Below, piece after piece: positions 1-55,009 of a stretch of DNA of 64,000 nt. Where the stretch lies: the NCBI GenBank assembly GCA_037379345.1, contig CM074520.1, positions 2,294,001 through 2,358,000 of the forward strand, read 5' to 3'. Positions within the stretch are counted from its first letter, which is position 1. Each line of letters begins with the position of its first letter. The notes beneath the pieces were generated by a model. It was not told the DNA's origin. It saw only the letters and a list, made by a program, of their open reading frames with translations, and did not search any database. A program made the translations under genes and the position numbers. Origin of the DNA: Perna viridis (Eukaryota).

Positions 1-1397
1 TTTATGTATCCCATGAGATAGACCATCTAACAATTATACATTTGAAGCCTTGGTAATTCCTTCAATATATCTACTCATCAGATGCCCCTGTGATGTAATG
101 AGATTTAGGGTTTTACACAGTAAATATACACTGTAAAAGGACCTACACATTTTTTTGTTAATGAATGATAGTTAATGTTATAGGTGTAAAGAAAGATGAT
201 TTAAAACATGTAGATGGCCTGAATGGACTTTCTTAGCATACGATTAAGAATCAAACATATGATCTTAGTGGTGATGATAGTGCAAGCTCCAAAACAGTGT
301 CTGATGTTCCAAATTTACTTTAGACACTGCAGTCAGCCCTTTAAGAAATTGCAAGCATCTTGGAAAGTCAGGAAAATGTGAAAGATTTTTATCCAATTTT
401 CAAACGAAATATGACTTGAATAATGTCAGAGAACTTCGAAATGTCTGTCTGCAGTGGTTAGTAAGAGACAAATCTATCAACTGCCCTAGAGTAGAGCTTG
501 GTGGTAGTGGTCCAGCTGCAACGCATGTGTGCAAATTTTATGCAGTTATATAAAAATTAGTGGCAGCATTTTGATTTACTGTGTGAAGTGAGAACCACAG
601 AGTCAGATAGAAGGATGAATGGACACTAGTATTAAAATGCACAAAAAAAAAAAAACAAAAAAAAAACAGCTGCATAAAGATCAGCTAATCATCAATATGC
701 AAGCACTAGGAGAAAACATCTAGCAATGAGAAATATTTGTGAAATTTTCAAAGTCAAGCACTCATCATTTCATATCAAATCTGTTTAGCAAATACAAAGT
801 TATACAACAGCTGCAGCTTTTTTTGTAACCCTTCAAGATCCATATTCTTATAATCTGATCTACAGTGTACGTGTACATGCACTGTAAGCCAGTAAGATCT
901 GTAATTCAACCACATATGTATACATGTACATGTATTACTTAGGTACAGAATGTTGTATTTACAAAAAAATGATCTAAAATGGCTACTGTCGTACCTGCTC
1001 TTCCAGAACATGTGCCCCTGAAATCACTTGCTAAGAATATAGTACATATACATAATATACATGTACATGTACATGTAATTCCACATACAGAATATTTTTT
1101 CTGATTCTGAAATCGGTCTTCAACCTGATAAACCATGCAGATTCCATGAACATTTTATAGTGTTACAAAAATACCAGAATCGGGCAACACTAATTAATTG
1201 TTGAACTGCATTTTATTCAACTTCCCTAACAAACCCCAATTTATAGGGCACTGAACTTTCCGAGTTGCGTCCCTTTGTGTAGAATATATTTTTGCTTAGT
1301 TCTATTTAAGACATTTATACATTCAGGAAGCATACATTTGCAAAATAAGTACTAATTAATTATTTTTTATACGTGAACCGCGATAAAATTTACTCAC

Positions 1398-1595
1398 AAG
1401 TCGACAAATCGGGCATGGAAACTGAGTGCTTCCCTGGTTACTGGTTCCAGCATATTTCTCTGCGTAGTCCTCGATGCAACCTCTACAGAATGTATGTAAA
1501 CACGGCAAGGCCTTAGGCTGGTTGTAGCATTGTAGACATATAGAACATGTCAGGAATGTATCCTCTATGTGTTCGACAACACTCGAACTTGTCAT
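1398..1595 (-). CDS. First coding exon of a RING-finger (TRIM-like) E3 ubiquitin ligase; gene continues past the left window edge
   Basis: MTSSSVVEHIEDTFLTCSICL...PKALPCLHTFCRGCI...FPCPICRL is a C3HC4 RING typical of TRIM N-termini; phase-0 donor CTT|GTGAGT at 1398/1397. Confidence 0.88.
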
Positions 1596-1663
1596 GTTTG
1601 GAATTTCATCCCGATTACAACGAAACAGGTGCCCGAATTAGACAGACATGTTCAACAACAAAA

Positions 1664-4580: not shown

Positions 4581-4673
4581 AACCTGTTGTGAAAAATCTG
4601 CCACCTCTTGTTTATTTTTTTTAGTTTACAAGTTTAACATTGAATATTAAATTAAATTAATACGGATAGTAAA

Positions 4674-7150
4674 ATGGCCCAAGGACAGGACCTAGAAAAC
4701 TTTAAAAGAACTTTTCAGCAGGCAATGAGTCAGTTACAAGTCCAAATAGATAATATACCAACAGTTAAGGATGAAAATTATCAGTCAGATCTATCTTTAT
4801 TTAGCCCGTTAGGCACGCAAACTAGAATTTCAAACTTTGAAGAAGAATTTGATCAAGTTGAACCGAGCCGTATGTTTGAGGTAAGGTCAAATGCATTTCA
4901 TAAAGACGATGAAAACGAGGATGATTCAGAATCGGAATTACCAGGATACTCCACAGTCTTGTATTACACAAGCCATAGCACACCGTCTGGGGATGCGAGT
5001 GACAGTTGATGATTATACCAACAGTAGTGCCACACCCCAAGTTACACCGCATGAATCACAGTTTAGCAATCGTATATTAGCTTCCTCTATGCGATCACCG
5101 GTACAACACAAATCCATAATTAGTTCATCCAAAAGTCATATATCAAACGCGGCGAAAGTCTCAACTGCAGTAGGTACACTAAAACAAGTAAGCTTCAATT
5201 ACAGGAAACCACCGTTAGCTAAACGTGAATGTGAACCTGATACATTTGACGGGAAAACTATAGATTAGCAAGATTACATTGTTCACTTTGAACAAGTTAC
5301 GGATTGGACAGGTTGGAATCCACGAGAATGTGCACAAATGTTATGTATGAGTTTACGTGGAACCGCACAGAAGTTACTAGGGGATGCGGAGCCAGAGGTT
5401 CTAGGCAACTATTTGTTATTGACCGATATGTTAAGCCGACGGTTCCCGCCAAAGGAACGAATTACCGCTTATCAGTGCGAATTCAACTCACGAACAATCC
5501 TGAAGAGTCTGTAAACTCTCTCATCTTACAGTTGTGTGATATATATACTAACAATAGCTTCAAATAAATCAAAACCAAATATAAAAGCCATAAAGCGACG
5601 GAAACAAAAACGCTCTTGGTCACCTGTCATCAAACAGGCATGTCAAGAGAATAAGTTATACTTCTGGATATGGAAGGAGAATGGTAGACCAGTGGACCCA
5701 TATAATGAACACTTTAAACTCATGAAAGAAGCCAAAAAGAACCTCCGTAAATTACAACGTCAGTACGAGGCAAGTAAAAGGAGATCAACATATGAAAATA
5801 TTATGGCAGCTCATGAGGGAGATCAAACTATCTTGTACAAACTCATAGGCGAGCAGAGAAAAGATGGAAATAGGGGAACTACCTACCTCACTGTAAATGA
5901 CCAAAATCTTACAACTAATGATGAGATTTGTGAGGGGTGGGCAGAATATTTCAAAGATCTAGCTACGCCAAATAGCTCCGATTGCTCCGATGATTCATAC
6001 AACCCCCGAGTCGAACTTGATCGTCTACTACTGGAAGATATATGTAAAAATAATAAAGATATCACACCAATATTTCTGGAATCTGAGGTGCAAGATATAA
6101 TCTCCTCAATGAAAAATCGCAAGTCCCCAGATAGTCTAGGAGTAATGACAGAACATTTTAAGTATGGCGGATATAAATTACTGGCGTTCTTAACAAAACT
6201 GATAAATCAAATCTTTGACAAAGGTCTGGTACCAGATCAGTTTCGAACTGGAACTGTGACACCTGTATTCAAGAATAAGGGGAAACCGTTACATGATCCT
6301 AATAGTTATCGCAAGATCACAGTAGATAGTATTGCTGGTATACTGGTGGAGAAACTACATCTCAATTTATTAACAGCTAAGATTGTCTTTGAACAATCTA
6401 AACTCCAACGTGGTTTCACAAATGGTGTATCACCATCTAGGGCGGCATTAATAGTAACAGAGCTCAGAGCAGAGGCAAGAGATAATCGATCTCCCGTATT
6501 TTTTTGATTCCTAGATGCGGCCAAGGCCTTCGACAAAGTCTGGCATGGATCAATGCTAAAAAAATGATTTTCCTCGACTGGGGAAACAGGGTATATAGCT
6601 TGGATGGTTGGCTGAGTCTCACCAGGGACTAGAGTTACCGTCTAGTATATTGTAGTTATATTATAAATTTTACCGAACCCAAACTATAGATAGGGATTTA
6701 TGCAGATCCGTTGGATATAAGCACCGGATCTGCAGTTCTCCAGAAAGTGGAGAAATATACGTAACAACAACAACAGGAGGCAGAACGTATCATTAGCTGA
6801 TTACGGTTACGCATTGAGGCGTTTAGTTAAATTAGCGTATCCTGATGTAGATAAAACTGAAGACTCAGCCATAGATCAATTCATTAATGGATTGAATGAT
6901 TTTGAAGTTCAGAAAAGGGTGCAATTTTCACATCCAAAAAACGTTAGAACGTGCTATCGCTGTAGCAATTGAGTATGACGCTATTCCTCCTTTTTATACA
7001 AAATACAAAAGATATGGTCATCATATAGAGGGATGTACAACACCAATCTGTTTTAAGTGCAAAAAAATGGTCATATGTCTAGATTTTGTAAACAGAATAC
7101 AAATAGTCAAATAGGAGACATGAAAACTCAGATGCTGGTCATAATTTTAA
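4674..7150 (+). pseudogene. gag: Gypsy gag, frameshifted and split by a LINE insertion
   Basis: EPDTFDGKTID*QDYIVHFEQV; CAQMLCMSLRGTAQKLL; RFPPKERITAYQCEFNSR, resuming after the LINE as RRQNVSLADYGYALRRLVKLAYPD; frameshifted CCHC knuckle CFKCKK-GHMSRFC ~7047-7090. Confidence 0.85.
5494..6775 (+). mobile_element. Non-LTR retrotransposon (LINE, RTE-X-like) fragment, 5'-truncated and internally deleted
   Basis: ORF 5536-6507 with WSPVIKQA..FWIWKENGRP, KSPDSLGV, PVFKNKGKP..DPNSYRKIT, LQRGF; then FLDAAKAFDKVWH after a frameshift; 3' UTR stem-loop TGCAGATCCG/CGGATCTGCA (6701-6734) and (AAC)n tail. Confidence 0.88.
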
Positions 7151-7712
7151 TAACAACAGCCTGCGTTCAGGGCCAGAGACACAGGCTCTTTAAATGATAG
7201 GCCCACTGTTGACATAAATCCTATAAAAAAAAACGGGCTTTTTGCTCCTGCTAAAATGGGACATCAGAAATTCAATCTTTTAATAGATACTGGTTCTATT
7301 GTTAGTTGTATTTCAAAATCAAAACTTGATGAAATGGCAACATGGAGAAATGTTCAAAACTGTTCAACTTCTTTAGTTAGTGCAGGTTGTTTAGACCTTT
7401 GAGTTCGTGGCAAAGATTTTGTTATTCATGATATCCCATTTAAACAAGATTTTGTAGTAATTTTAGGGATAGATTTTCTGGAGGCAAACCAAGCATTAGT
7501 AAATGTTTATAAAGCTTTACTAGTTATGCCAGATATGAGCACAATAAAGTTGAATAAACTTAAAAATTCACACTGTGCACTGATCAGACTAAAGGATAGG
7601 CTAGTGTTACCTGCAAATACAGAGTCATTGGTTCAAATTAAAATTCCTAAAAATGTTATGAGCGACGATATGATAGTTGAGCCAAATGTCACCCTTACAA
7701 AACAAGGTGTAC

Positions 7713-7827
7713 TGATTTATTTACTTTATGTTCTTTGTTGTGTATGTCTGTTTTCCATGTCTGGTCTTTGTCCCTGGATTATATTCTTTTGATTACCGCT
7801 ATAACCTTGATTCCCTTGATTACTCTT
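7713..7827 (+). mobile_element. Short Penelope-like 3' tail inserted in pol
   Basis: Interrupts KQGVLI|SSTL; related sequence at 16720-16950(-) and 59776-59941(-). Confidence 0.7.
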
Positions 7828-7928
7828 TCAAGTACTTTAGGTAATACTAAGAGTAGGGAAGTTATTATTTCTGCAATAAATTGTAGGGATTTTGATTTAA
7901 GAAAGAACAAAGTTGTAGGGAGTATTCA

Positions 7929-8317
7929 GAAATGATCTCAGACCCAGTAGAGATAAAGCAAACAGTACTAACTTCTGAAATGATCTCTGACCCAGTAGAG
8001 GTAAAGCAAACAGTACTAACTTCTGAAATGATCTCAGACCCAGTAGAGATAAAGCAAACAGTACTAACTTCTGAAATGATCTCTGACCAGTAGAGGTAAA
8101 GCAAACAGTACTAACTTATGAAATGATCTCAGACCCAGTAGAGGTAAAGCAAACAGTACTAACTTCTGAAATGATCTCTGACCCAGTAGAGGTAAAGCAA
8201 ACAGTACTAACTTCTGAAATGATCTCAGACCCAGTAGAGGTAAAGCAAACAGTACTAACTTCTGAAATGATCTCAGACCCAGTAGCGATAAAGCAAACAG
8301 TACTAACTTCTGAAATG
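7929..8317 (+). repeat. 48-bp tandem repeat x8 inside pol (EMISDPVEVKQTVLTS)
   Basis: Unit GAAATGATCTCAGACCCAGTAGAGGTAAAGCAAACAGTACTAACTTCT; the 4th copy lacks 1 nt. Confidence 0.95.
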
Positions 8318-11300
8318 CCAGAACATTTATAATGTTTAACGGATAAGATCTCTGATAAACTTACTGAGAGTCAAAAAGAAGAAATTGAGGAACTGGTCAT
8401 TAAATTTCAAGATATTTTGTTAGGTCCAGATGGGAAGTTAGGCAGAACAGACCTAGTGAAGCATACTATTGACACAGGCAATACCAAACCAATAAAAAAT
8501 ACCCCCTATAAGAACTCCAATAAAATTGAGGGAGGTTATTGATCAGGAAGTTGATAATATGCTACAACAGGGAGTAATTGAACCTAGTAGTAGTCCCTGG
8601 AGTGCCCCTGTCATCCTATGTCTTAAAAAGGATAAAACTTGGAGATTTTGCATTGATTATCGCCTTCTTAATGCTGCTACTTTAAAAGATTCATACCCCC
8701 TCCCAAAAATTGATACTTCTCTTGATTCATTAGGAGGTAAGTGGTTCAGTACCATTGATTTAGCATCTGGTTATTGGCAGGTTATGGTAGATGAAAAGGA
8801 CAGGCCCAAAACAGCTTTTGCATGTCAAAAAGGTTTATACCAGTTTAGGGTGATGCCATTCGGGTTGTGCAATGCTCCTAGCAGTTTTGAAAGATTAATG
8901 GATATAGTATTAAAGGGTTACCAATGGGAAAGGTGTTTATATTACCTGGATGATGTGATAATTTTTGGTCCAACTTTTGAGAAAGCTATGGAAAATTTGG
9001 AACTTGTATTTGATAGGTTTAGGGGTGCAAATTTAAAGTTAAAACCCCAAAAGTGTTTCCTTTTTCAACACCAAGTTCTTTATTTAGGTCATGTTGTGTC
9101 AGATGAAGGAATCAGTTGTAATCCTGATAACGTTAAGGCTCCAAGTGAATGGCCTGCTCCTAGAAATGTAAATGAGGTCCGGAGTTATCTTGGCTTAGCT
9201 GGTTACTACCGTCGCTTTATTCAATTTTTCAGAAGTTGCCTCTCCTTTGACAAATTTAACTAAACAGGTGTGAAGTTTGCATGGGATGAAAGTTGTCAAA
9301 ATGCATTTGTTCATTTGAAGGAAAAACTTACTTCAGCTCCCGACCTCAGTTATCCAATGGGTGAGGGTCAGTTTATTTTAGATACTGATGCTAGTGGACA
9401 TGCTATAGTTGCAGTCATATCACAAGTTCAAGGGTCAGAGGAAAAAGTAATTGCTTATGTTAGTCGCATGTTAACCGAGTCTCAGATGAAGTATTGTACA
9501 ACTCATAGAGAACTTTCGGCTGTGGTTATATTTGTAAAATATTTTTGCCTTTATTTGTTTGGTCGTCAGTTCAAAATACGTACAGATCACGCTTCTTTCA
9601 TTTGGTTAAAAAGATTTAAACAGCCTGAAGGAATGGTTGCTCGATGGATTTCTGTTCTAGATACTTATGATTATTTAATAGAGCATAGGAAGGGTAGTCA
9701 ACATACAAATGCAGATGTATTATCTCGAAAACCCTATAGGTAATGCAAAAGGAAAGATTGTCCTGGCTGTGATAAGGTTGATGGTAGTTTAACTTTGGAA
9801 AATGGTGACGGTAATGTCATAGCTCCTTTAAGGTTTGAAGGTCTGTCTTGATAACACCATTCCTTATGAGGAAGAGGAAGGTGCAGCAGAGAATAATATT
9901 GATTTACCACAAATGTCTAATTGGTTGAGAATTTGGTCAAATGGAGACATTTTAAGCTGGCAAGAAAATAATCCTGATACAGCTAAAGTTGTCGAAATGT
10001 TGAATCAATATGATCAAAAACCAGAGAGAGATATTGTGACAGGTAGTAGTTAGGAACCTTTGGAGTACTTGGGAGTCATTAACCCTAGTGAATGGTATTC
10101 TTTATCTCAAGTATTATCAAGGTGAAAATGAAAGTCTTTTTTTTTAGTTCTACTCAAGGAGATTCGTAGTCAATTCATGTTATTGCAGGTCATTTAGGTA
10201 GGGATCATACAATAAAAGCAATTAAACATAGATTTTATTGGCCTGGTATGACATCTGATATCAGTGCATGGGTTCGAGAATGTTCAGTTTGTGCCCGAGC
10301 TAAGCCTGGTCCAGGAGTAGGCAGATTTCCACTTCAGCAGTCCTCAGTAGGATGTCCTTTTGATAGGATAGGTGTAGACATAGTAGGCCCAATTCCTGTA
10401 ACAGAATACAGGAATGAATATTTGATTGTAGTACAAGACTACTTAACCAAATGGGTTGAAGCTTTTGCTGTCCCAAATCATAATGCATTAACAGAAGCTG
10501 ACAAATTAGTTACAGAAATACTTTGTAGATTTGGTATGCCTAGTCAAATTCATAGTGATCAGGGTAGGATATTTGAGTCTGAACTGTTTAAATCTGTGTG
10601 TGATATATTGGGAATTGATAAAACTAGAACTGCCCCTTACCGCCCACAAAGCGATGGCCTTGTGGAGAGATTCAATCAAACTTTACAGAGGATGTTATCA
10701 ATGTTTGTCAATAAATTTAGAAATAACTTGGATGACCTGTTAACTTTTGTATTAATGGCAAACAGAGCCACAGAAAATGACTCTACTGGAATAAGTCCTC
10801 ATAAAATGTTAACATGTAGGGAAATGTCTTATCCTCTTGACATTATGGTAGGAAACCCTAAAGATAAAGAAGTTTGTTGTCCCATAGAATATGTTCAATC
10901 GATAGGTTATTCTTTTGAGAAAATGTTCAATTTTGTAAGGCAGAATTTAGCTGCAAATAGACAGAAAAAGAACTATGATAGGTGTATTAAACCTAGACAA
11001 TGGCTATGGTATCCACCAACAGCTGGTATTAAGTTAGGTTTAGGATGGAGAGGTCCCTATAAAGTTTTAACTAAACTTACTGAAGTTACTTACAGAGTAC
11101 AAGAAGTTCCAAATTCTAGGCCCATAGTGCTTCATGTAGATCATCTAAAGCCATATCTAGGTTCAGTTCCAGAAGCTTGGCGTCAGCCTGCAATAGAGGA
11201 TTCAGAGTCAGATGAAACTGACATAGAACCACCTGTCTTTGATAACTTTTTCCATTCATCTTTTTCTGATAATAGTGCTCATCTTGATGATGAACCTATT

Positions 11301-11967
11301 CCTCATACACCTACCCAAAACAGAACTAGATGTGGAAGAGTTGTTAGAAAGCCTACTAAATATTCACCTTGTATATAGCTTTATGTGTTATATAAATATA
11401 TTTACGCTTAGTACAAATGTACCTAAATTAGGTACTCAAATCATATACATGAGTATAGTTTGAATGGTATGGTAAAATGGTAAACAGTTGGTAAGGAAGT
11501 AATGAGTTGATTTCATAATTGATATGTATTCCTTTAATTGAGTAAATTAGTGGGAGAAGTTAGAATTTATTCTATAGAGGGGTTTAATATTTATTCAGAT
11601 CCTACATGTACAGTGTATACAAATATCAAGCATTATCATAGATATTAAGTAGTTTGTTGATATGACAAAATACTACTGATAAGAATATTATATGATCACT
11701 TCGTAGACCTATTTAAAACTCTCAGTGAGAATCAGAAGAGTTTGTATACTTGATTTGATATGTTTTCTTTATCTCAAAAAAAAAAAAGATTGTCCTTAAA
11801 ACCTGACAAGAAACGTGTTGAAATATTTCCGGTACTATTGTCTTTACTTAATACAAAGTATGTCACCCACATACCTATATCTTTGATATTTACAAAATGT
11901 ATGCTTGACTATATGCACATTGTGAATACCCAGAGTATTTTCTTTACTTACCCTGTTATTTTACAGT

Positions 11968-27810: not shown

Positions 27811-29379
27811 CTGGAATAAAAACAAAGAATATTTAAAAGTTTTTCAGGATTTTGATGGTTTAACTTTGACTTCCAAACATATCAATGATTGAACATTTTA
27901 TACTTTATACTGAATCATTCAAAACATTACAAATTTTGCTCTGTTTTCTCTATCTATAACAACAATTTTCTTTATCAAATATAAATACATTTTAAGTTGA
28001 ACAAAATAAAGTGAATGCTCCAGTTACTTGATTGTACCAACTGTCCTGAAATATAAAATCTAGCATCATCTACACAGCTACAAAACTTCTACTCAGAAAG
28101 AAAAAAAAACAAAAAAAAAACAGATTTTTATATTTTTATGACTGGATTTCAGGAAATATTACACCAAAAAAACCCATTTAACAAAAATACAAATTCTTAC
28201 TTAACCCTCCAATACCAATCAAAATGTATATTCCACATGCAATTTAATAAGAAGAGTTATTGGCCTTTTCCCAAATTTTATCTCATTAGTTGACTATGTC
28301 ATGCTATACATTTTTTCAAATTCCAAGGATTAGACCATACATTTTGGAACTCTAATGCATCAAGAAGTCATTTAATTTGAAATAAAAAACTTAGGTAAAA
28401 TAAAGCTATTTAGAATAAATTTTTGTGCATTAAAATATCGATAGTGCAGTTATTTCTAATACATTAAGCAATCACTCTAAGGAAATGAGAGTTCCAGGAT
28501 GGGTAAAATATTCTTGATAAGAAGGCAGCCATGAAGCATTTCAGATACTGGTAGTTGCTTAGTACTGATGCAAAAACCAGAGTACATGTAAACTTTTTAT
28601 AACATCTTTTTTTACCCTTCAATCATTATCAAATACACACAGAAGATAGAATATAGAAAGGTCAAGTACAAGGGGACAACGACAAATTCTGTTGTCAGAA
28701 ATTAAGTTGACTGAAAAATAAAGATACTGCACAAAGAAGCGAAATACTCTAGCAGTTTTCATTAGTATACTGAGCGACAAAAAAGCATCTAGGAGTATAT
28801 ATAAATGATAAACCAATATTACTACTGAACTAAACAGTTACCGTTTTGTGTGAAAACTGAAAAGGGAGGAAAAATATAAATTGATTGTATCATCTATATA
28901 GGTTCAATTTAGAGTTAGCAGAACATGATTGATTTTGAAGGCCATAATATTCTGTTTCAATTTTATAGATCAGTTTATGAACCAATCATTTGTATGTACA
29001 TGTATTGATAAAATTGTTTTCAAAGCTTAGGTAATCAACCTAAAGAAATGTTATATCTGACTATTGAAGAGAAAATCCTACTTAAATGTAAGCCTTCCAA
29101 ATGAACTACCATATCAGCTAACTTCTTAATTAAACCTTTGCTATGTTATTATAGGAGCCTTTAAAGACTAACTTCAAATTGGAACAAAAATTCTATCAAC
29201 TGCTACAGGTGTATTGTGTATTTGCAAGGTTATAATGAAAGCATGAAAAGCCTAAAATTTGCAATATTTTGCTGATGTCCTATAATTAACAGTCTTATAG
29301 GATATATATATGTACAAAGATTATCATATGTAGCAAAAATTGAAAATAAGGAATAAAAAACTTGGTGATTAAGTTTTAC

Positions 29380-36100: not shown

Positions 36101-36135
36101 CTGAGGTAATATTAACACATTATAACTGGTCTTGT

Positions 36136-36470
36136 CTGTAGTACTGATAGATTTACTTGGTTTCTGTAGTCCTGACCGATTTGCTTGGTTTCTGTAGTAC
36201 TGATAGATTTACTTGATTTCTGTAGTACTGACCAATTTGCTTGGTTTCTGTAGTACTGACAGATTTGCTTGGTTTCTGTCGTACTGATAGATTTGCTTGG
36301 TTTCTCTTGTATCAATAGATTTGCTTGGTTTCTGTCATACTGACTGATTTGCTTGGTTTCTGTCGTACTGATAGATTTGCTTGGTTTCTGGAGTACTGAC
36401 AGATTTGCTTGGTTTCTGTTGTACTGATAGATTTGCTTGGTTTCTGTAGTACTGATAGATTTAATTGGTT
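36136..36470. repeat. 28-bp minisatellite, ~12 copies
   Basis: TGATAGATTTGCTTGGTTTCTGTAGTAC. Confidence 0.92.
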
Positions 36471-37551
36471 AAGACATTGGATTTAACAAATTAATATAAT
36501 AAAGGACGTTAAAATGCATCGAAATCAAACAGATTCTGAATTCAATCAGGATTTATAGGAGTTTAAGACGACATTTACTTCCATTTTGGCAAAGCAAGGT
36601 CAATTGGGGACAACAGATAGAAGATCTGAGACTATTACTGATCATGTTTTCTTCAAGTCCAAAATTCTTTATGTTTCAAATACAAAATCATAGACATGTT
36701 TACACCAGATTCCATATACAAGTAAAGGGCAATTGTGAAAGTCATCTATTATCTCAGTCAGCAGATCTGACTATAAACTTGTATGATTAAAGTTGAATAT
36801 CCCACTTTTCTAAAACAAAAGAATACAGAGACAAATTGAATATCAATCCTCCCACTCAGCAGCTGCTTTTAACTTTCTTGTACCTACAAGTTACATGATT
36901 AAAACCGTCTCATCTACTGATCGTAGACAATAAAATTAAGTCTACGCTGCTGAGAACAATATTATACAATTACACAATGTACAGTATTTCAATCAGCATT
37001 TATCTCCTCACCAGAAACAAAGAAAATCATTGACAACATAAACAGCGATAAAATGTACATACAGTTTGTGTTTTATTCATCATTAATGACAATAGATAAT
37101 AGTTTCTATCTACATAGTCTGTGTATTTAATTAAATTCCCGCTAACTCTAACAACAGGAATAGACAATAAGAACATTTCTGTTCCTAATTCAATCACATG
37201 GAGATCGAAAAAAGAGGGAAAATGACACTTGTAGGATGTGTGACAAAGAACTGAGGCACCCCTTCGGCAGATTTTAGATACTATCATCAAATGAGAATGG
37301 AATTGAATTCAGCTGTACTTTTATCAACATGAAATTTTTTTTCCAAAGAAGGCAAAAAGCCGTCATGCCTTGAGATTTTATCAAACCTCCAGATTATATC
37401 TCTCTGTGAAAAAAAAATCCATTTGTAGGACGACAAAAGAAGAATTCTAAATTAATATACATATATATATCATGTTAGTATTTTGTTTTGAGACCCAAAA
37501 ACTTGAGAAAAAGTAAAGGTTCCAAATTGATAGAGGTTTCAATTTTAAGGA

Positions 37552-37828: not shown

Positions 37829-39180
37829 AGGTACTCAGAGGGGCACAGAATTAAGGCTGCTAATATAAATACCAAGTCTGAATATGTCTATGTTTCAATA
37901 TCACAGAGACACACCCAACTGAATCTAAAGCAAGTAACAGATCTAGCAGTTTTACATGGACATACTTTTAGTGTAAGCTGAATACTGAATGTATTTTAAT
38001 AGTCATTTCATAAAAAAAATCAGATTATTAGTCCCACATCAAAATTACTCAAGGGTTACTATCAACTTTATACTACATCAATACATATCTGTTTTGTTAT
38101 GTGTGCAGTTTTTGGTGTGTTGTATGTTTGGTCTTTGTCTGTTGTCCATTTTGGGTTGTTTTATCCAAGGATTTCCCCTACACCCTCAGTACCATTCTGT
38201 ACTTCAGGTGTTTAAAGTGTACTTCTTGCCCTACAATGACGCATGCTTTGTATATAACTTCCCTTTTTAACTTCTGTTTACAATTGATAGAAACAATTAT
38301 AAAATGGACCATAAAGCATTCCATTAGTAAGAAGAATACAAACAAGTAATCCCTGAAATCAAAGCCAAGGACATAATGGATAGAACTAACATATCATCTT
38401 CATAATTCCATAATTCTAAATGTCTATCAAGATATACGGTAACCAATTTCCTTGATGTAGTGGAGGAATTAATCCATATATACCTCTGTGGTTTCTGATG
38501 TAATGTAATTTATCAAAAATCCTTTCTCAAACAAACTTTGATCAATCTTAGATGCTCTATACATTATCGTCCATTGCAAAACCAGGCCTACATTGTCTAG
38601 CAAATAAGATGCTTCTGTATGAACAATTTACTTTTATTACAATAAATATACTCAGGATATCATTTTGTTCATCTGGTAAATCACAACCAATCTATGTAAT
38701 ATATCCTCAATCCATTAACCGATTTATGCTCCAATTTCTTGGAAATGACAAAACATCTTCAAGTCATTTCATTTGCTTTTGAGAAATAGTCTATAAATTT
38801 GTATAAGTTATGAAATATGAGATGGTCTTCAGCAAGAAGTGTCATATTTACTGAGACCCAGAAGATAGTACTCTAGGGCTAACAGCTATTAACAGTCACC
38901 ATCCCAAAGGTGAATATCAAACTATTTGTCAGTTTGAGCACTTTTCTGAATTAAAAACTTAAGAGTATTCTCAAATGTACAATAAATATATCAAGTCAGC
39001 CTACATGATGGCATTGGTGATTTATTTTCCCAGATATGATGTATGATGACATTCCAAACATGAAAACTCCAAGGACCATACAAACTCATGAAAAATGATA
39101 TTAACAGAGATGATACTGTTACAAAGTCAACAAGTGTACTACTAAGACATGGGCTGACTTGTGAGAGGATTGACATAGGT

Positions 39181-39615
39181 GAATGTAGGGTGCAAACATG
39201 CAGAAGGCCTGACAAAGGAGAATGTAGGCAGCAAACATATAGAAGGCCTGACAAAGGAGAATGTAGGGTGCAAACATGCTGAAGGCTTGACAAATGTGAA
39301 TGTAGGGAGCAAACATGCAGAAGGCCTGACAAAGGAGAATGTAGGGAGCAAACATGCTGAAGGCCTGACGAAGGAGAATGTAGGGAGCAAACATGCTGAA
39401 GGCCTGACGAAGGAGAATGTAGGCAGCAAACATGTAGAAGGCCTGACAAAGGAGAATGTAGGGTGCAAACATGCTGAAGGCTTGACAAATGTGAATGTAG
39501 GGAGCAAACATGCAGAAGGCTTGACAAAGGAGAATGTAGGGAGCAAACATGCTGAAGGCCTGACGAAGGAGAATGTAGGGAGCAAACATGCAGAAGGCTT
39601 GACAAAGGAGAATGC
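39181..39615. repeat. 39-bp minisatellite, ~11 copies
   Basis: GAATGTAGGGAGCAAACATGCTGAAGGCCTGACAAAGGA. Confidence 0.95.
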
Positions 39616-40657
39616 ACAGCAGTTAAATTCATGAGGCAATGTTTAGAATATCTAACATTTTCTAAAGATGAGTTTATAAAAATTATAAGAAAAAAAATTC
39701 AGAAAAGAAATACAGAGGACACTCTAGTCAATCCCTGGTCCTTGGTCACTATAAACAAAAGAATTAATAAAAACATTGTAATCTAAAAACACATTAACAA
39801 AACAACTGATAATAACAAAATAACAACTTCCTTAATGTTTAACATGTTGTTTTAATGATCTATAATTACCAATAGTGATCAGAAACAGACCAAGTGCCAA
39901 CTCCAATTTTTCGTTTAGACCATGACCTGCCAATATTTATACATGCTTGGAGAAAATTTCATCTTATTTCCATTGTTTTTTGACATTAGCTACACTGTTG
40001 TGTAATTAGATGGGGAGATTTATTTCCCCAGCGAACGATTTAATTTCGTTTTATTTTGGTCTGATGAAAGAGCAATGCACATGCACCTTTTGCAAAAATC
40101 GATAACTCTATGTTGTATACAAAATATAATATAAGCAGAAAGATTGCTTTAATCTTTTATTTCTGATCTGGAAATCCCTCGACATAATTCAGTTAATTTA
40201 ATTCGTAGATTGCCAGAATTATTGACAAAAAGACATTCTTCACAATCTCCCAATCTATACTTCATTTTCCTTTTTTCTGATTAGTTGGTTAAAATATGAA
40301 ATCGTTGTGAAAATTCTATCAATTCTTCGTAGCAGGCTGTTTGTCTTAACTTCAAATGTGACATTTTCAATTTGATTGCAATTTATGGAAACCTGTGGTG
40401 TTGTTACGTAAAATCTAATCTGGACCAAGATCGAACATGTAACAAACTAATTAAGTTGACTTAAATTGACAATTTCTGAGGATGGGATAGTTTTACATGT
40501 ATTATTCTCAATCAATTGCTTTTGAGGTTCTAAGATGTGGTTCCAAACCTTTCAGTTAGAAAGGGTGTTGAGATAATACCTAAAATTGCCATCTAAGCAC
40601 AGCAAGATATAAAACTTCAAAATATTCTCTACGGACTATTTAAAAATTCAAAATTAC

Positions 40658-40865
40658 CTTTCATTGAAAGCATTCCTAGAAGTCCCAACTTGTACACTGT
40701 TCTCCTCGATCAAAAACTTCATCCTATCATAAAATGAGGCTGACGGATATGGTGAATGTTTCGTCAGTAGAATGTCCAGGGGGTCAGGTGACATCTGACA
40801 GAATGCATCTCCTAGACAGGAGGTTGTCATACAGCAATCTGGATCCTGGCAATCTTTCAGTCCAT
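40658..40865 (-). CDS. Ten-m: Teneurin exon (cysteine-rich region)
   Basis: GLKDCQDPDCC...ASFYDRMKFLIEENSVQ; phase 1-2. Confidence 0.93.
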
Positions 40866-41390
40866 CTAAAACATCATTGTCAAAATAGTTACATTTGGTT
40901 TCTTAAATGAAAATTCAATAAGGGGTACCATGCAAGAAAATGAAACCAGAGGCTCCCAGGAGCCTAAATTGCCCACCTGGTTGAATTTTGCCTTTCAAAG
41001 GCAATACATTTAACAAGAAGTTGTCCAACAGTTTTGACTCAAGAAGTCTTTGGTAGGGCTTATCATAAGGACCATTTCAACAACTGAAAGTTTCTTTTAA
41101 TTTATCATAGTTTTCAAGATATTGACTGAAAACTGTTAAAAAAAAGTCATTTTCCCCTTTCAAGGGCAATAGCTCTTACAAGAAGCTATCTGACAACTTT
41201 TATCCTGAAGACTTTTGTAGTCCTAGTAATAAGGATCATTTCAGCTATGGAAAGAATTTGACTGAACCTAACGGTTTTGGAGATATATGCAAAAAACTAC
41301 TGTCTGACCACTATGTTCTATTTTTAGTAACAGCTGCCATGTTTTTGACGGATCAAAAATCCCCACAACAGTTCTATGCAGGATACCCCA

Positions 41391-41695
41391 TCACTATCAC
41401 ACAGACTGAACTTAAAACCTATCACTACCATGCAGACTGAACTTAAAACCTACCACTATCAAGAAAACTGAACTTAAAACCTACCGCTATCAAGAAGACT
41501 GAACTTAAAACCTATTACTATCAAGCAGAAGGAACTTAAAACCTATTACTATCAAGCAGAAGGAACTTAAAACCTATTACTATCAAGCAGAAGGAACTTA
41601 AAACCTATTACTATCAAGCAGACTGAACTTAAAACCTATTACTATCAAGCAGAAGGAACTTAAAACCTATCACTATCAAGCAGACTGAACTTAAA
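41391..41695. repeat. 31-bp minisatellite, ~10 copies
   Basis: GACTGAACTTAAAACCTATTACTATCAAGCA. Confidence 0.92.
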
Positions 41696-42107
41696 TTATA
41701 CTTCTAAATGTTGATTTAATTGCACTTTGAAATTGTGCATAATGAAAATACAACTTGTACAAAAAATTGTTAATTTAAATGTTCATTTGTCTATGCATTT
41801 ATAATCACCAATTCCCTTTTAATTGTAACAAGCCATAAATATGTCATAAAAGAGTTGAACAGTAATGCTGACAATGATGGAATATGTAGAAACAACTATT
41901 ACACTGTACATGGAATTTTGCCAGATTTCAAATATGTAAGATTTTACCTTCTAGGGCAAATTTTGAGGACCAAAATCCATTAAACTATTGTGTAACCCTA
42001 AATATATCATATATTTGGTTACCAAACCCCATCCCTCCCCCCAAAATATGAGAAATATGTCGTACAAGAAGAGTTTTGACTGAATAGGATTTACACATCA
42101 AACAAAC

Positions 42108-42257
42108 CTCTATCATTATCCTCCATGTCATTACAGACCATCTCCATGGCAACATCACATCCCTTCCCTGTCCAACCACTATGACAGGCACACTTCCAAC
42201 CGTCGGAGGAAAACAACCGACATTCACCATGTTTGTTACATCCATTAGGACATCCAT
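42108..42257 (-). CDS. Ten-m: Teneurin exon (EGF8)
   Basis: GCPNGCNKHGEC...WKCACHSGWTGKGCDVAME; phase 1-1. Confidence 0.93.
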
Positions 42258-42340
42258 CTATAAATTTTAATAAATTTTCATAAAAAAGTTAAATTGAGAA
42301 TTTCTATTCAATTCAGTTCAAAAGAAATTAAGGGACTTAC

Positions 42341-42370
42341 CATGCAAAATTCTTAAAGTATGGCAAAAGA
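42341..42370 (-). CDS. Ten-m: Candidate alternative 30-nt microexon (VFCHTLRILH) between EGF7 and EGF8
   Basis: ttttattatctttcag|...CATG|GTAAGT; phase 1-1, open frame. Confidence 0.65.
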
Positions 42371-42779
42371 CTGAAAGATAATAAAATATGACACAACTGT
42401 AAAATAGATAATGTTCAGTCATCAAAAAGAAATTCACATTGAAAATAATACAACACTGAATACTGTGTTACACCCCAAACAGTTAGCGTGAATTATAGTT
42501 CTAAAAGCCAAATTACCAACACCTTGCTAAAATGTATTCATAATGTTATACTTCTTCTAAGCTAAAGCGTAATTATAGTCTCGCCCTTTCATAACTGTAA
42601 TAGCCTATCCTCATTTCAGCCGTAACACTGCTACTTGTGTCACTTCTTGAACATGGATCAACTTCACAAGAAGAATTAACAGTATTTTTTTTAGGCTTAA
42701 ATTTTCATCAGCTGATCAATATCTTTTCTGGCAAGGATAGAATTGGTTTCAAAAGTTGCCATAGATCATGACCATTTAC

Positions 42780-42965
42780 CTAATGTGCAGTGTTTTCCAT
42801 TCCAGCCTTTACGACATACACAAGTTCCATTTTCACACTTTCCTTTGAAATCATCACACCTTGGGTCACATGATAACTGGTCACAAAGAGCTCCACCCCA
42901 TCCAGAAGCACAGACACATTTCTGATTTTGGCACTGGCCACGATAACAACCAAGTCGGCAATTTT
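42780..42965 (-). CDS. Ten-m: Teneurin exon (EGF6-7)
   Basis: NCRLGC...CDPRC...GWNGKHCTL; phase 1-1. Confidence 0.93.
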
Positions 42966-43345
42966 CTAAGGGTAAAATGTCAAAGGTCATGGTCAAGGTC
43001 AAAATAATTGTTCATTTTTGCAACTTAAATACTGTTAAAATGATGTATTTATGACATAAGGAAAATAAAATTGTTAACGTTTATTTATAACACTTGTAAA
43101 ACTAGAAAAACTTCCTGTTGGAAAATAAAGATTGCTTATTTTCAACTAGAAAGAAAAGACGGAAGAATATTGATGTATAAGAATAATAAATATAGGTCAC
43201 AACAGGAAAACATTACAACACTCATATTGGTGGATACTGAGTGGTGAGATGGTAATTCCATTCTATCACAACCTTAAGACTTACATTGTTTTCATTATAA
43301 TATTAGGTACTTATTTCCATACTAGCATCTTTTTAAACATTTTCT

Positions 43346-53876: not shown

Positions 53877-54383
53877 CTGTAATTATATGCAAACATATAT
53901 ACCCTAAACATGAACACAGCATTAAAAGATCTGTTACATTCTTTTTTTTAAAACAGACATGGCTAATATGATTATCTACTTCAGTCTTTTAAGTACTTTC
54001 AAGAGGTTAGAATATTTATGTACAATAATCAAAATATCCACATCTGGAAGACAATTAAACTATTATTCCACATTGAGTTTTTTTATCTTTTGAATTGTTC
54101 TGCCCAGGACAATAACTCTCATGATAGACAAGTATCCAACTTACAACAGATAAATCTATTTTCTTTTCTAATTTACCTCCTAAGAGTAAAATTTAACACT
54201 ATCAACTGGATGTTGTAGATTTTTTTGTCAATTCTAAAAAGTGAACACTTGTACACTACAATATAAACTGATAAGATGAGGAAAATCCACTTAGAGTAAA
54301 ATGACAACTTATAAATTATCATTTTTTTTTATTTTTCATATTAGAGAACGGACCAAATTTGCAGCAACTCATAATATTTAGTA

Positions 54384-54557
54384 AAACCAGTCATAACCAA
54401 AGCATGTATGGAATGGAAACCAGTCATAACCAAAGCATGTATGGAATGGAAACCAGTCATAACCAAAGAATGTATGAAATGGAAACCAGTCTTTACCAAA
54501 GCATGTATGAAATGGAAACCAGCCATAACCAAAGAATGTATGGAATGGAAACCAGTC
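54384..54557. repeat. 33-bp minisatellite, ~5 copies
   Basis: AAACCAGTCATAACCAAAGCATGTATGGAATGG. Confidence 0.92.
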
Positions 54558-54586
54558 TAAACAACATATTGTCTTGAGTTTTTTTT

Positions 54587-54985
54587 GTACTGTTTGGACA
54601 ACCCCATAGCTCAAACTGGTACTGTTTGGACAACCCTATTGCTCAAACTGGTACTGTTTGGACAACCCCATTGCTCAAACTGGTACTGTTTGGACAACCC
54701 CATAGCTCAAAGTGGTACTGTTTGGACAACCCCACTGCTCAAACTGGTACTGTTTGGACAATCCCATTGCTCAAAGTGGTACTGTTTGGACAACCCCATA
54801 GCTCAAAGTGGTATTGTTTAGACAACCCCATTGCTCAAAGTGATTCTGTTTGGACAACCCTATTGCTCAAAGTGGTACTGTTAGGACAACCTCATTGCGC
54901 AAACTGGTACCATTGGGACAACCCCATTGCTCAAACTGGTACCATTTGGACAACCCTATTGCTCAAACTGGTATCATTTGGACAA
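54587..54985. repeat. 32-bp minisatellite, ~12 copies
   Basis: GTACTGTTTGGACAACCCCATTGCTCAAACTG. Confidence 0.93.
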
Positions 54986-55009
54986 GTTTCCCTTTTACAA
55001 TAGACTTAC

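What the first reader, a model, noticed from the sequence alone, without database searches (positions are those of the whole stretch)
42341..42370. Cys-containing 30-nt microexon at the teneurin EGF7/EGF8 splice position
Seen: consensus sites ttttattatctttcag and G|GTAAGT flank 30 nt in phase 1-1, inserting VFCHTLRILH between EGF7 and EGF8. Known: vertebrate teneurins have a short alternatively spliced insert between EGF7 and EGF8 that affects dimer geometry and adhesion. Inference: the switch is either ancestral to bilaterians or convergent in molluscs. The extra unpaired Cys could add a third inter-chain disulfide to those from EGF2 and EGF5.
Basis: partly seen in the sequence, partly recalled or inferred. 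Interest (0 to 1): 0.76.

Follow-up and report, generated by a model that had tools for sequence, protein, structure and literature searches.

The report
Unused mini-exon look-alike in mussel teneurin
A 30-base stretch in a mussel teneurin gene looks like a tiny optional exon at the same spot where vertebrate teneurins have one, but the RNA data examined skip it, so it is most likely an unused look-alike.

Summary
On the minus strand, 42370..42341 is a 30-nt open stretch between a strong acceptor and a perfect G|GTAAGT donor. Read in phase 1-1 it gives VFCHTLRILH. It lies in the 522-nt intron whose ends (42780, 42257) RNA reads confirm. That intron sits exactly at vertebrate teneurin splice site A (mouse Ten3 insert AHYLDKIVK).

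Use of the stretch is not supported. In one raw RNA-seq run, all 15 listed junction reads join 42780 directly to 42257. Two roughly 9.2-kb transcript contigs from two other runs do the same. Depth over the 30 nt is zero in all three.

Other points against:
- GC content is 0.30, the same as the intron; neighbouring exons are 0.44-0.46.
- The motif pattern described for eMIC-dependent neural microexons is absent.
- The peptide is hydrophobic and carries an unpaired Cys.

A point for: a candidate this good is rare by chance, about 0.003 expected for this intron and about 0.19 over all the gene's introns.

The tissues of the runs are unknown, and I could not fetch the matching introns of other bivalves. 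My estimate is about 0.6 unused pseudo-exon and about 0.28 tissue-restricted real cassette.

The parts
42341..42370 (-). Candidate 30-nt cassette. In phase 1-1 it would insert VFCHTLRILH. GC 0.30. It contains UGCAUG at its 3' end.
   Evidence: RNA depth is zero in X21, X1 and X2.
42371..42396 (-). Acceptor-like region: 12 of 16 pyrimidines at -20..-5, then CAG. The AG exclusion zone is only 24 nt. No UGC, UCUC or CUAAY within 100 nt upstream.
42335..42340 (-). Donor-like GTAAGT directly after the exon-final G, a 7 of 7 match to GGTAAGT.
42258..42779 (-). The real 522-nt phase-1 intron between the EGF7 and EGF8 exons. It is removed as one piece in all RNA examined and is single copy in the genome.
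   Evidence: joint 42257->42780: 15 reads from 12 starts in X21; contigs of depth 34 and 45.6 in X1 and X2..
42780..42965 (-). EGF6-EGF7 exon, ending ...GWNGKHCTL plus the phase-1 G.
   Evidence: The 5' end is read from the AG at 42967-42966 and from contig ends at 42966-42968.
42108..42257 (-). EGF8 exon (150 nt, phase 1-1), DGCPNGCNKHGEC...DNDR.
   Evidence: joints 42257->42780 and 40865->42108.
40658..40865 (-). Next exon, the start of the Cys-rich region, joined to the EGF8 exon in RNA.
   Evidence: joint 40865->42108; contig pieces of X1 and X2.

Best explanation
The 30 nt is an unused pseudo-exon. It is ordinary AT-rich intron sequence that happens to carry a good acceptor, an open frame and a perfect donor, inside the intron that corresponds to vertebrate teneurin splice site A. 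Shown: the splicing machinery removes the whole 522-nt intron in one step in every informative RNA data set examined. Inferred: at 30 nt the stretch is too short for both splice sites to be recognised together without dedicated enhancers, and the motifs reported for such enhancer-dependent microexons are absent upstream. Strong sites alone therefore do not make it an exon.
For:: in X21 (raw RNA-seq, about 19% of the run read), all 15 listed junction reads (12 starts) join 42780 to 42257 with no letters between. Depth is zero in bins 42280-42363 and 42364-42447, against exon depths of about 16-27. In X1 and X2, single contigs of 9193 and 9190 nt (depth 34 and 45.6) pass EGF7->EGF8->next exon without a break or branch, and no contig lies on the 30 nt. 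GC is 0.30, equal to the intron (0.30) and unlike the three neighbouring exons (0.44-0.46). The AG exclusion zone is 24 nt, shorter than at the two real acceptors nearby (44 and 34 nt). There is no UGC, UCUC/CUCU or CUAAY in the 100 nt upstream; these are the features PMC8797185 (section 10 passage) reports for eMIC-dependent microexons in flies and mammals. The peptide has six hydrophobic residues and an unpaired Cys in an extracellular inter-EGF linker; the two vertebrate inserts I saw (AHYLDKIVK in PMC11058771; EYQVHDALT in P0034) have no Cys; about 0.19 such candidates are expected by chance over this gene's introns.
Against: A candidate of this quality in this particular intron has an empirical chance of about 0.003, and the intron is one of only two known alternative sites in vertebrate teneurin ectodomains. 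Its length (30 nt) is close to the vertebrate 27 nt. Both splice-like sites are stronger than the real flanking ones. Strong sites with default skipping are also what a neuron-restricted microexon would show. The RNA test is thin: three informative runs of unknown tissue. With 0 of 15 reads the inclusion level in X21 is only bounded below about 18% (my arithmetic). 65 joints and 51 'letters between' rows were not shown. Contigs drop rare variants. Conservation in other bivalves could not be tested.
Confidence: 0.6

Rival explanations
1. It is a real cassette microexon restricted to certain tissues or stages. In some neurons or stages the 30 nt is included and lengthens the EGF7-EGF8 linker by ten residues. 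By analogy with Ten3 insert A, this would loosen EGF6-7 from the YD shell and change how the dimer packs. In the sampled tissues it is skipped by default.
For: The position and phase match vertebrate site A exactly. The size is similar: 30 nt against 27 nt. Chance expectation for this intron is about 0.003. It is the only pair in 128 kb of window strand sequence that meets the strict or medium criteria with at least 10 pyrimidines. The sites are stronger than the real flanking sites. UGCAUG lies at the exon's 3' end. The residue pattern is loosely helix-like and shares H-x-L...I with AHYLDKIVK; that is my reading of two short peptides and is weak.
Against: No inclusion in X21, X1 or X2. Composition is intronic and the reported eMIC motif pattern is absent. 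It has an unpaired Cys. No counterpart was found in other invertebrate loci with the same intron. No hit was found for the intronic reading frame in the protein collection (a blank there says little).
Confidence: 0.28
2. It is a young, lineage-specific exon or splicing noise. The sites are used now and then at a very low level with no conserved function, as raw material for a future exon.
For: Strong sites in a short intron could be used occasionally. The upper bound on inclusion in X21 is only about 18% (my arithmetic). The composition is still intronic, as expected for a recent origin.
Against: No read or contig shows any use at all. This reading is hard to tell from the best explanation without much deeper data.
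Confidence: 0.1

Closest known systems
Vertebrate teneurin splice insert A (between EGF7 and EGF8; AHYLDKIVK in mouse Ten3; a short insert in chicken Ten2)
   Same: Same intron, with the same position and phase. The PDB chains of Ten3 and Ten2 with and without the insert differ by 9 residues exactly where the window's EGF6-7 exon ends and its EGF8 exon begins. The candidate is of similar length (10 against 9 residues) and is in frame.
   Different: The vertebrate insert is seen in cDNA and protein (passages of PMC11058771 and PMC3278476), whereas the mussel stretch was not seen in any RNA examined. Its sequence is not recognisably related. It carries a Cys and is more hydrophobic.
eMIC (SRRM3/4-type) dependent neural microexons of bilaterians
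   Same: Very short, in frame, in a neuronal adhesion gene, and skipped by default.
   Different: The upstream pattern reported for this class is absent: a long AG exclusion zone, UGC near the 3' splice site, a UCUC-rich tract and a strong CUAAY branch point (PMC8797185, passage of section 10; tested). Neural inclusion could not be tested.
Silent splice-site look-alikes in introns (pseudo-exons or decoy exons)
   Same: Consensus sites and an open frame but no use in RNA. Two other microexon-like findings in this genome were reported silent by earlier follow-ups (not checked by me).
   Different: Those two were tandem copies of a real splice junction. This one is a single, non-repeated stretch at a position with a known vertebrate counterpart.
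Arthropod teneurin TTR-domain insert (SIFWNYFNA)
   Same: A 9-residue hydrophobic alternative insert in an invertebrate teneurin (PMC10240212, passage). It shows that invertebrate teneurins do have short hydrophobic cassettes.
   Different: It lies in a different domain (TTR, not the EGF7-EGF8 linker) and a different phylum, and it is documented in transcripts.

Membership tests
Teneurin gene | Type II membrane protein with eight EGF repeats (EGF2 and EGF5 with five Cys), a Cys-rich region, NHL, a YD shell and a C-terminal Tox-GHH | tested here: met
   The minus-strand exon translations show a TM segment, EGF1-8, the Cys-rich region and long YD exons. Searches match Ten2/Ten3 at EGF6-8. In one search the 553-aa exon carries PF05593 and PF25023 and is 71% identical to a Mytilus coruscus protein that also has PF15636. 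There is one EGF8 match in the whole genome, in line with a singleton teneurin in non-arthropod protostomes (PMC6428715, passage).
Teneurin splice-site-A cassette | Lies in the phase-1 intron between the EGF7 exon and the EGF8 exon | tested here: met
Teneurin splice-site-A cassette | Short, in frame, with no stop (27 nt / 9 aa in mouse Ten3) | tested here: met
   30 nt, phase 1-1, open frame.
Teneurin splice-site-A cassette | Present in a fraction of mature transcripts | tested here: not met
   0 of 15 listed junction reads in X21, zero depth over the 30 nt in X21, X1 and X2, and both 9.2-kb contigs skip it. The tissues are unknown and only 3 informative runs were laid.
Teneurin splice-site-A cassette | Conserved in orthologous introns of related species | not testable with these tools
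No bivalve genomic locus could be fetched. The two closest protein fragments (P0002, P0005) carry no DNA. In more distant, unidentified invertebrate loci there was no counterpart.
Teneurin splice-site-A cassette | Peptide related to the vertebrate inserts | tested here: inconclusive
   It shares only H-x-L and one I with AHYLDKIVK, by eye. The vertebrate inserts themselves differ from each other (AHYLDKIVK against EYQVHDALT in P0034), so sequence is not a usable criterion.
eMIC-dependent neural microexon | UGC close to the 3' splice site, a long AG exclusion zone, a UCUC-rich tract and a strong CUAAY branch point | tested here: not met
   none of UGC, UCUC/CUCU or CUAAY occurs in the 100 nt upstream, and the AG exclusion zone is 24 nt. 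The feature list comes from a passage of PMC8797185 on flies and mammals; whether it holds in molluscs is not known to me.
eMIC-dependent neural microexon | Inclusion restricted to neurons | not testable with these tools
   Run identities and tissues are coded, and read laying allowed one call.

The most novel reading that the evidence does not exclude
A mussel teneurin has a neuron- or stage-restricted 30-nt cassette at exactly the EGF7/EGF8 site where all studied vertebrate teneurins have their insert A. The linker-length switch that reshapes teneurin dimers would then be either older than vertebrates or reinvented at the same intron in molluscs, here with an extra free Cys that could alter covalent dimerisation.
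Probability: 0.25. Interest if true: 0.65.

Novelty: not a real feature. Interest (0 to 1): 0.3.

Why it matters
If the stretch were used, it would be the first sign I know of that the EGF7/EGF8 splice switch of teneurins exists outside vertebrates. My literature searches and the passages I read describe site A only in vertebrates, and they describe the propeller site as vertebrate-only. That would make the origin of splice-coded teneurin recognition testable in a lophotrochozoan. As the evidence stands, it mainly shows that a textbook-perfect splice-site pair in the right intron can still go unused, so RNA evidence is needed before such microexons are called.

Tried and rejected
Things that led nowhere:

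The metagenome scan returned only loci 34-63% identical in EGF8, from unidentified invertebrates. The scan of bacterial and archaeal genomes gave one irrelevant MAG hit.

2. Full-length mollusc teneurin isoforms, to look for an annotated insert.
- The big representative search with the EGF8 exon returned mostly short ORFs called on genomic DNA and no full-length teneurin among the best 150.
- The word search with the 553-aa exon gave 18 hits, all 374-951 aa and none reaching the EGF region. I therefore gave up on climbing to longer proteins step by step.
- The word search with EGF8 gave only P0002 and P0005.

3. The intronic reading frame that holds the 30 nt found no candidate. That says little.

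4. TE or repeat origin is rejected: the intron is single copy.

5. A structured RNA is rejected: there was no Rfam match in 40600-43100 at E up to 1.

6. No paralogue is available for comparison: there is only one EGF8 match in the genome.

7. Run X5 was uninformative. It showed only unspliced intron contigs (41772-42095 and 42331-42758) and no exon contigs.

8. I did not search or fold the spliced EGF7-cassette-EGF8 model. The helix/spacer idea is therefore untested. Supplementary files of papers were closed. Lists of conserved microexons in the supplements of the eMIC papers might bear on whether a teneurin site-A exon is known outside vertebrates.

Full report
**What is there**

The window carries a teneurin gene on the minus strand, from about 63.1 kb down to 21.8 kb. 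The translations show:
- an intracellular proline-rich exon and a TM exon;
- EGF1 (about 53.8 kb), EGF2-3 (about 50.0 kb), EGF4-5 (about 47.0 kb), EGF6-7 (42965..42780) and EGF8 (42257..42108);
- a Cys-rich exon (40865..40658), NHL exons and long YD exons.

The 553-aa YD exon is 71% identical to a Mytilus coruscus protein with a Tox-GHH domain, so the host is a mussel relative. The genome (723 Mb, 46 contigs) has a single EGF8 match. That fits the single teneurin reported for non-arthropod protostomes (PMC6428715, passages).

**The observation**

Searches confirm every letter of the finding:
- the acceptor context is ...catattttattatctttcag;
- the 30 nt at 42370..42341 follow;
- the donor is G|gtaagt;
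- in phase 1-1 the reading is VFCHTLRILH, followed by the D that normally begins EGF8.

PDB sequence searches show that the EGF6-7 exon ends at the residue matching Ten3 chain residue 429 / Ten2 chain residue 432 (CT[IL]). They also show that EGF8 starts at chain residue 430 in the A0 Ten3 chain and at 439 in the A1B1 chains, and at 433 against 442 in Ten2 chains. The mussel intron is therefore the exact counterpart of vertebrate splice site A. PMC11058771 (passages) gives the mouse Ten3 insert as AHYLDKIVK, predicted to be a 9-residue helix that acts as a spacer and frees EGF6 from the YD shell. PMC3278476 (passage) reports a short insert at the same place in chicken Ten2.

**Is it more than chance?**

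The candidate is the only AG...GT pair in both strands of the window that meets the strict or medium criteria with at least 10 pyrimidines.

Order-3 Markov simulations of the window give 0.047 open candidates per 64 kb at the candidate's own stringency. Under looser criteria they give 2.9 per 64 kb.

A null from real sequence used 20 x 10 kb of the same chromosome, both strands (400 kb). It gives 3 pairs with a composite score of 26 or more, of which 2.0 are open in a given phase. That is 0.0026 per 522-nt intron and 0.19 per roughly 38 kb of this gene's introns.

The score was designed after seeing the candidate, so these numbers flatter it. The other top scorer in the gene (15 nt, score 27) is another candidate that the same reader flagged. 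Even so, landing in the site-A intron is a real coincidence.

**RNA**

The look-up of sequencing runs listed 14 probable RNA runs that hold 0.23-0.28 of the stretch's words, roughly the exon share, plus one raw RNA-seq run. I laid X21 (raw), X1, X2 and X5 on 40600-43100.

- X21: about 19% of the run was read. 15 reads from 12 starts join 42257 to 42780 cleanly. Depth is 0 in both bins covering the 30 nt, against about 16-27 on the exons.
- X1 and X2: single contigs of 9193 and 9190 nt run next exon - EGF8 - EGF6-7 with the direct joint, at depth 34 and 45.6. No contig lies on the 30 nt. X2 has a small piece near 42401, but its depth is 0 in the bin that holds 23 of the 30 bases.
- X5: it gave only unspliced intron contigs, so it says nothing about the junction.

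No joint at 42341 or 42370 was listed, but 65 joints were not shown. With 0 of 15 reads, the inclusion level in X21 is bounded only below about 18% (my arithmetic). The tissues are coded and unknown. The test therefore rules out constitutive or common use, but not a neuron-restricted exon.

**Sequence character**

- GC content is 0.30, identical to the intron and unlike the neighbouring exons (0.44-0.46).
- The AG exclusion zone upstream is 24 nt. The two real acceptors nearby have 44 and 34 nt.
- No UGC, UCUC/CUCU or CUAAY occurs in the 100 nt upstream. A passage of PMC8797185 reports these features, plus long AG exclusion zones, for eMIC-dependent microexons in flies and mammals.
- UGCAUG sits at the 3' end of the stretch. 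This is one hexamer, at a background rate of 0.44 per kb on this strand, so it is weak evidence.
- The peptide is hydrophobic and adds an unpaired Cys to an extracellular linker between disulfide-rich domains. The two vertebrate inserts I saw have no Cys (AHYLDKIVK, and EYQVHDALT in fragment P0034).

**Relatives**

The metagenome scan gave 32 loci from unidentified invertebrates, 34-63% identical in EGF8. Of these, 19 held both exons. 18 have the same phase-1 intron, with 136-1612 nt between the exon matches; one more (L033) has about 62 nt. L031 has no intron.

In these introns the best look-alike scored 23. Alignments of two groups (9 and 5 loci) showed no conserved internal island: the best was 0.63 and 0.80 mean column identity, against 0.93-0.97 for the exon edges. 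The intron is therefore old, but I found no sign of an old cassette in it. This is weak evidence, because the taxa are unknown and the intron alignments are poor.

Arthropod-like fragments have EGF7 and EGF8 contiguous.

**Weighing**

The positional coincidence and the site strength raise the odds of a real cassette well above the base rate for such flags. The absence from three transcript sets, the intronic composition, the missing enhancer-type motifs and the awkward peptide pull the odds down again. My estimates are:
- about 0.6 for an unused pseudo-exon;
- about 0.28 for a tissue-restricted real cassette;
- about 0.1 for rare or noisy use.

The third-disulfide idea rests wholly on the exon being real and was not testable.

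**Limits**

- Only one read-laying run was allowed, and run identities were coded.
- Supplements of papers were closed.
- My statement that I saw no description of site A outside vertebrates rests on searches. It also rests on passages, not whole texts, of PMC11058771, PMC10240212, PMC6428715, PMC3278476, PMC6422961 and PMC8797185.

Noticed in passing
window 40936-41390 (intron between the EGF8 exon and the next exon): An interspersed repeat of about 450 bp. There were at least 6888 first-look candidates in the genome, and the 40 scored copies are 90-94% identical over nearly full length. It is very abundant in RNA (bin depth up to about 1770 in X21, tens of thousands in contig word depth), mostly in one orientation and with many variant letters. 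It looks like a young, transcribed non-autonomous element. No Rfam match.
   Followed up: partly
window about 41487-41687: Short tandem units next to that repeat match its last 50 bases or so several times over (last rows).
   Followed up: no
window 28842-28856 (minus strand): The 15-nt candidate that the same reader flagged (VFTQN) has the highest composite splice-site score in the window (27). Its use in RNA was not examined here.
   Followed up: no
window 42939-43100 and 42966-42968: Both long transcript contigs (X1, X2) end exactly at the 5' edge of the EGF6-7 exon. Separate low-depth contigs read from the exon into the upstream intron. This suggests some retained intron or pre-mRNA, or another splice choice upstream of EGF6.
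   Followed up: no
window about 4656-11375 (plus strand): Long ORFs with translations that look like gag, protease, reverse transcriptase and integrase, i.e. an LTR retrotransposon downstream of the teneurin gene.
   Followed up: no
window 1359-1637 (minus strand): An open stretch with a Cys/His pattern like a RING finger (CSICLQCY...CLHTFCRGC), possibly an exon of a neighbouring gene. The RING reading is from memory and was not scanned.
   Followed up: no
window 39000-39700, 36115-36480, 7868-8370, 54300-55000: Periodic translations in several frames point to minisatellite-type tandem repeats in introns and intergenic DNA.
   Followed up: no
P0034; loci L003-L033: A vertebrate-like teneurin fragment carries a different 9-residue insert (EYQVHDALT) at site A, so the insert sequence is not conserved among teneurins. 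The phase-1 EGF7/EGF8 intron is shared by the mussel, vertebrates and most of the unidentified invertebrate loci, but it is missing in L031 and in arthropod-like fragments.
   Followed up: partly
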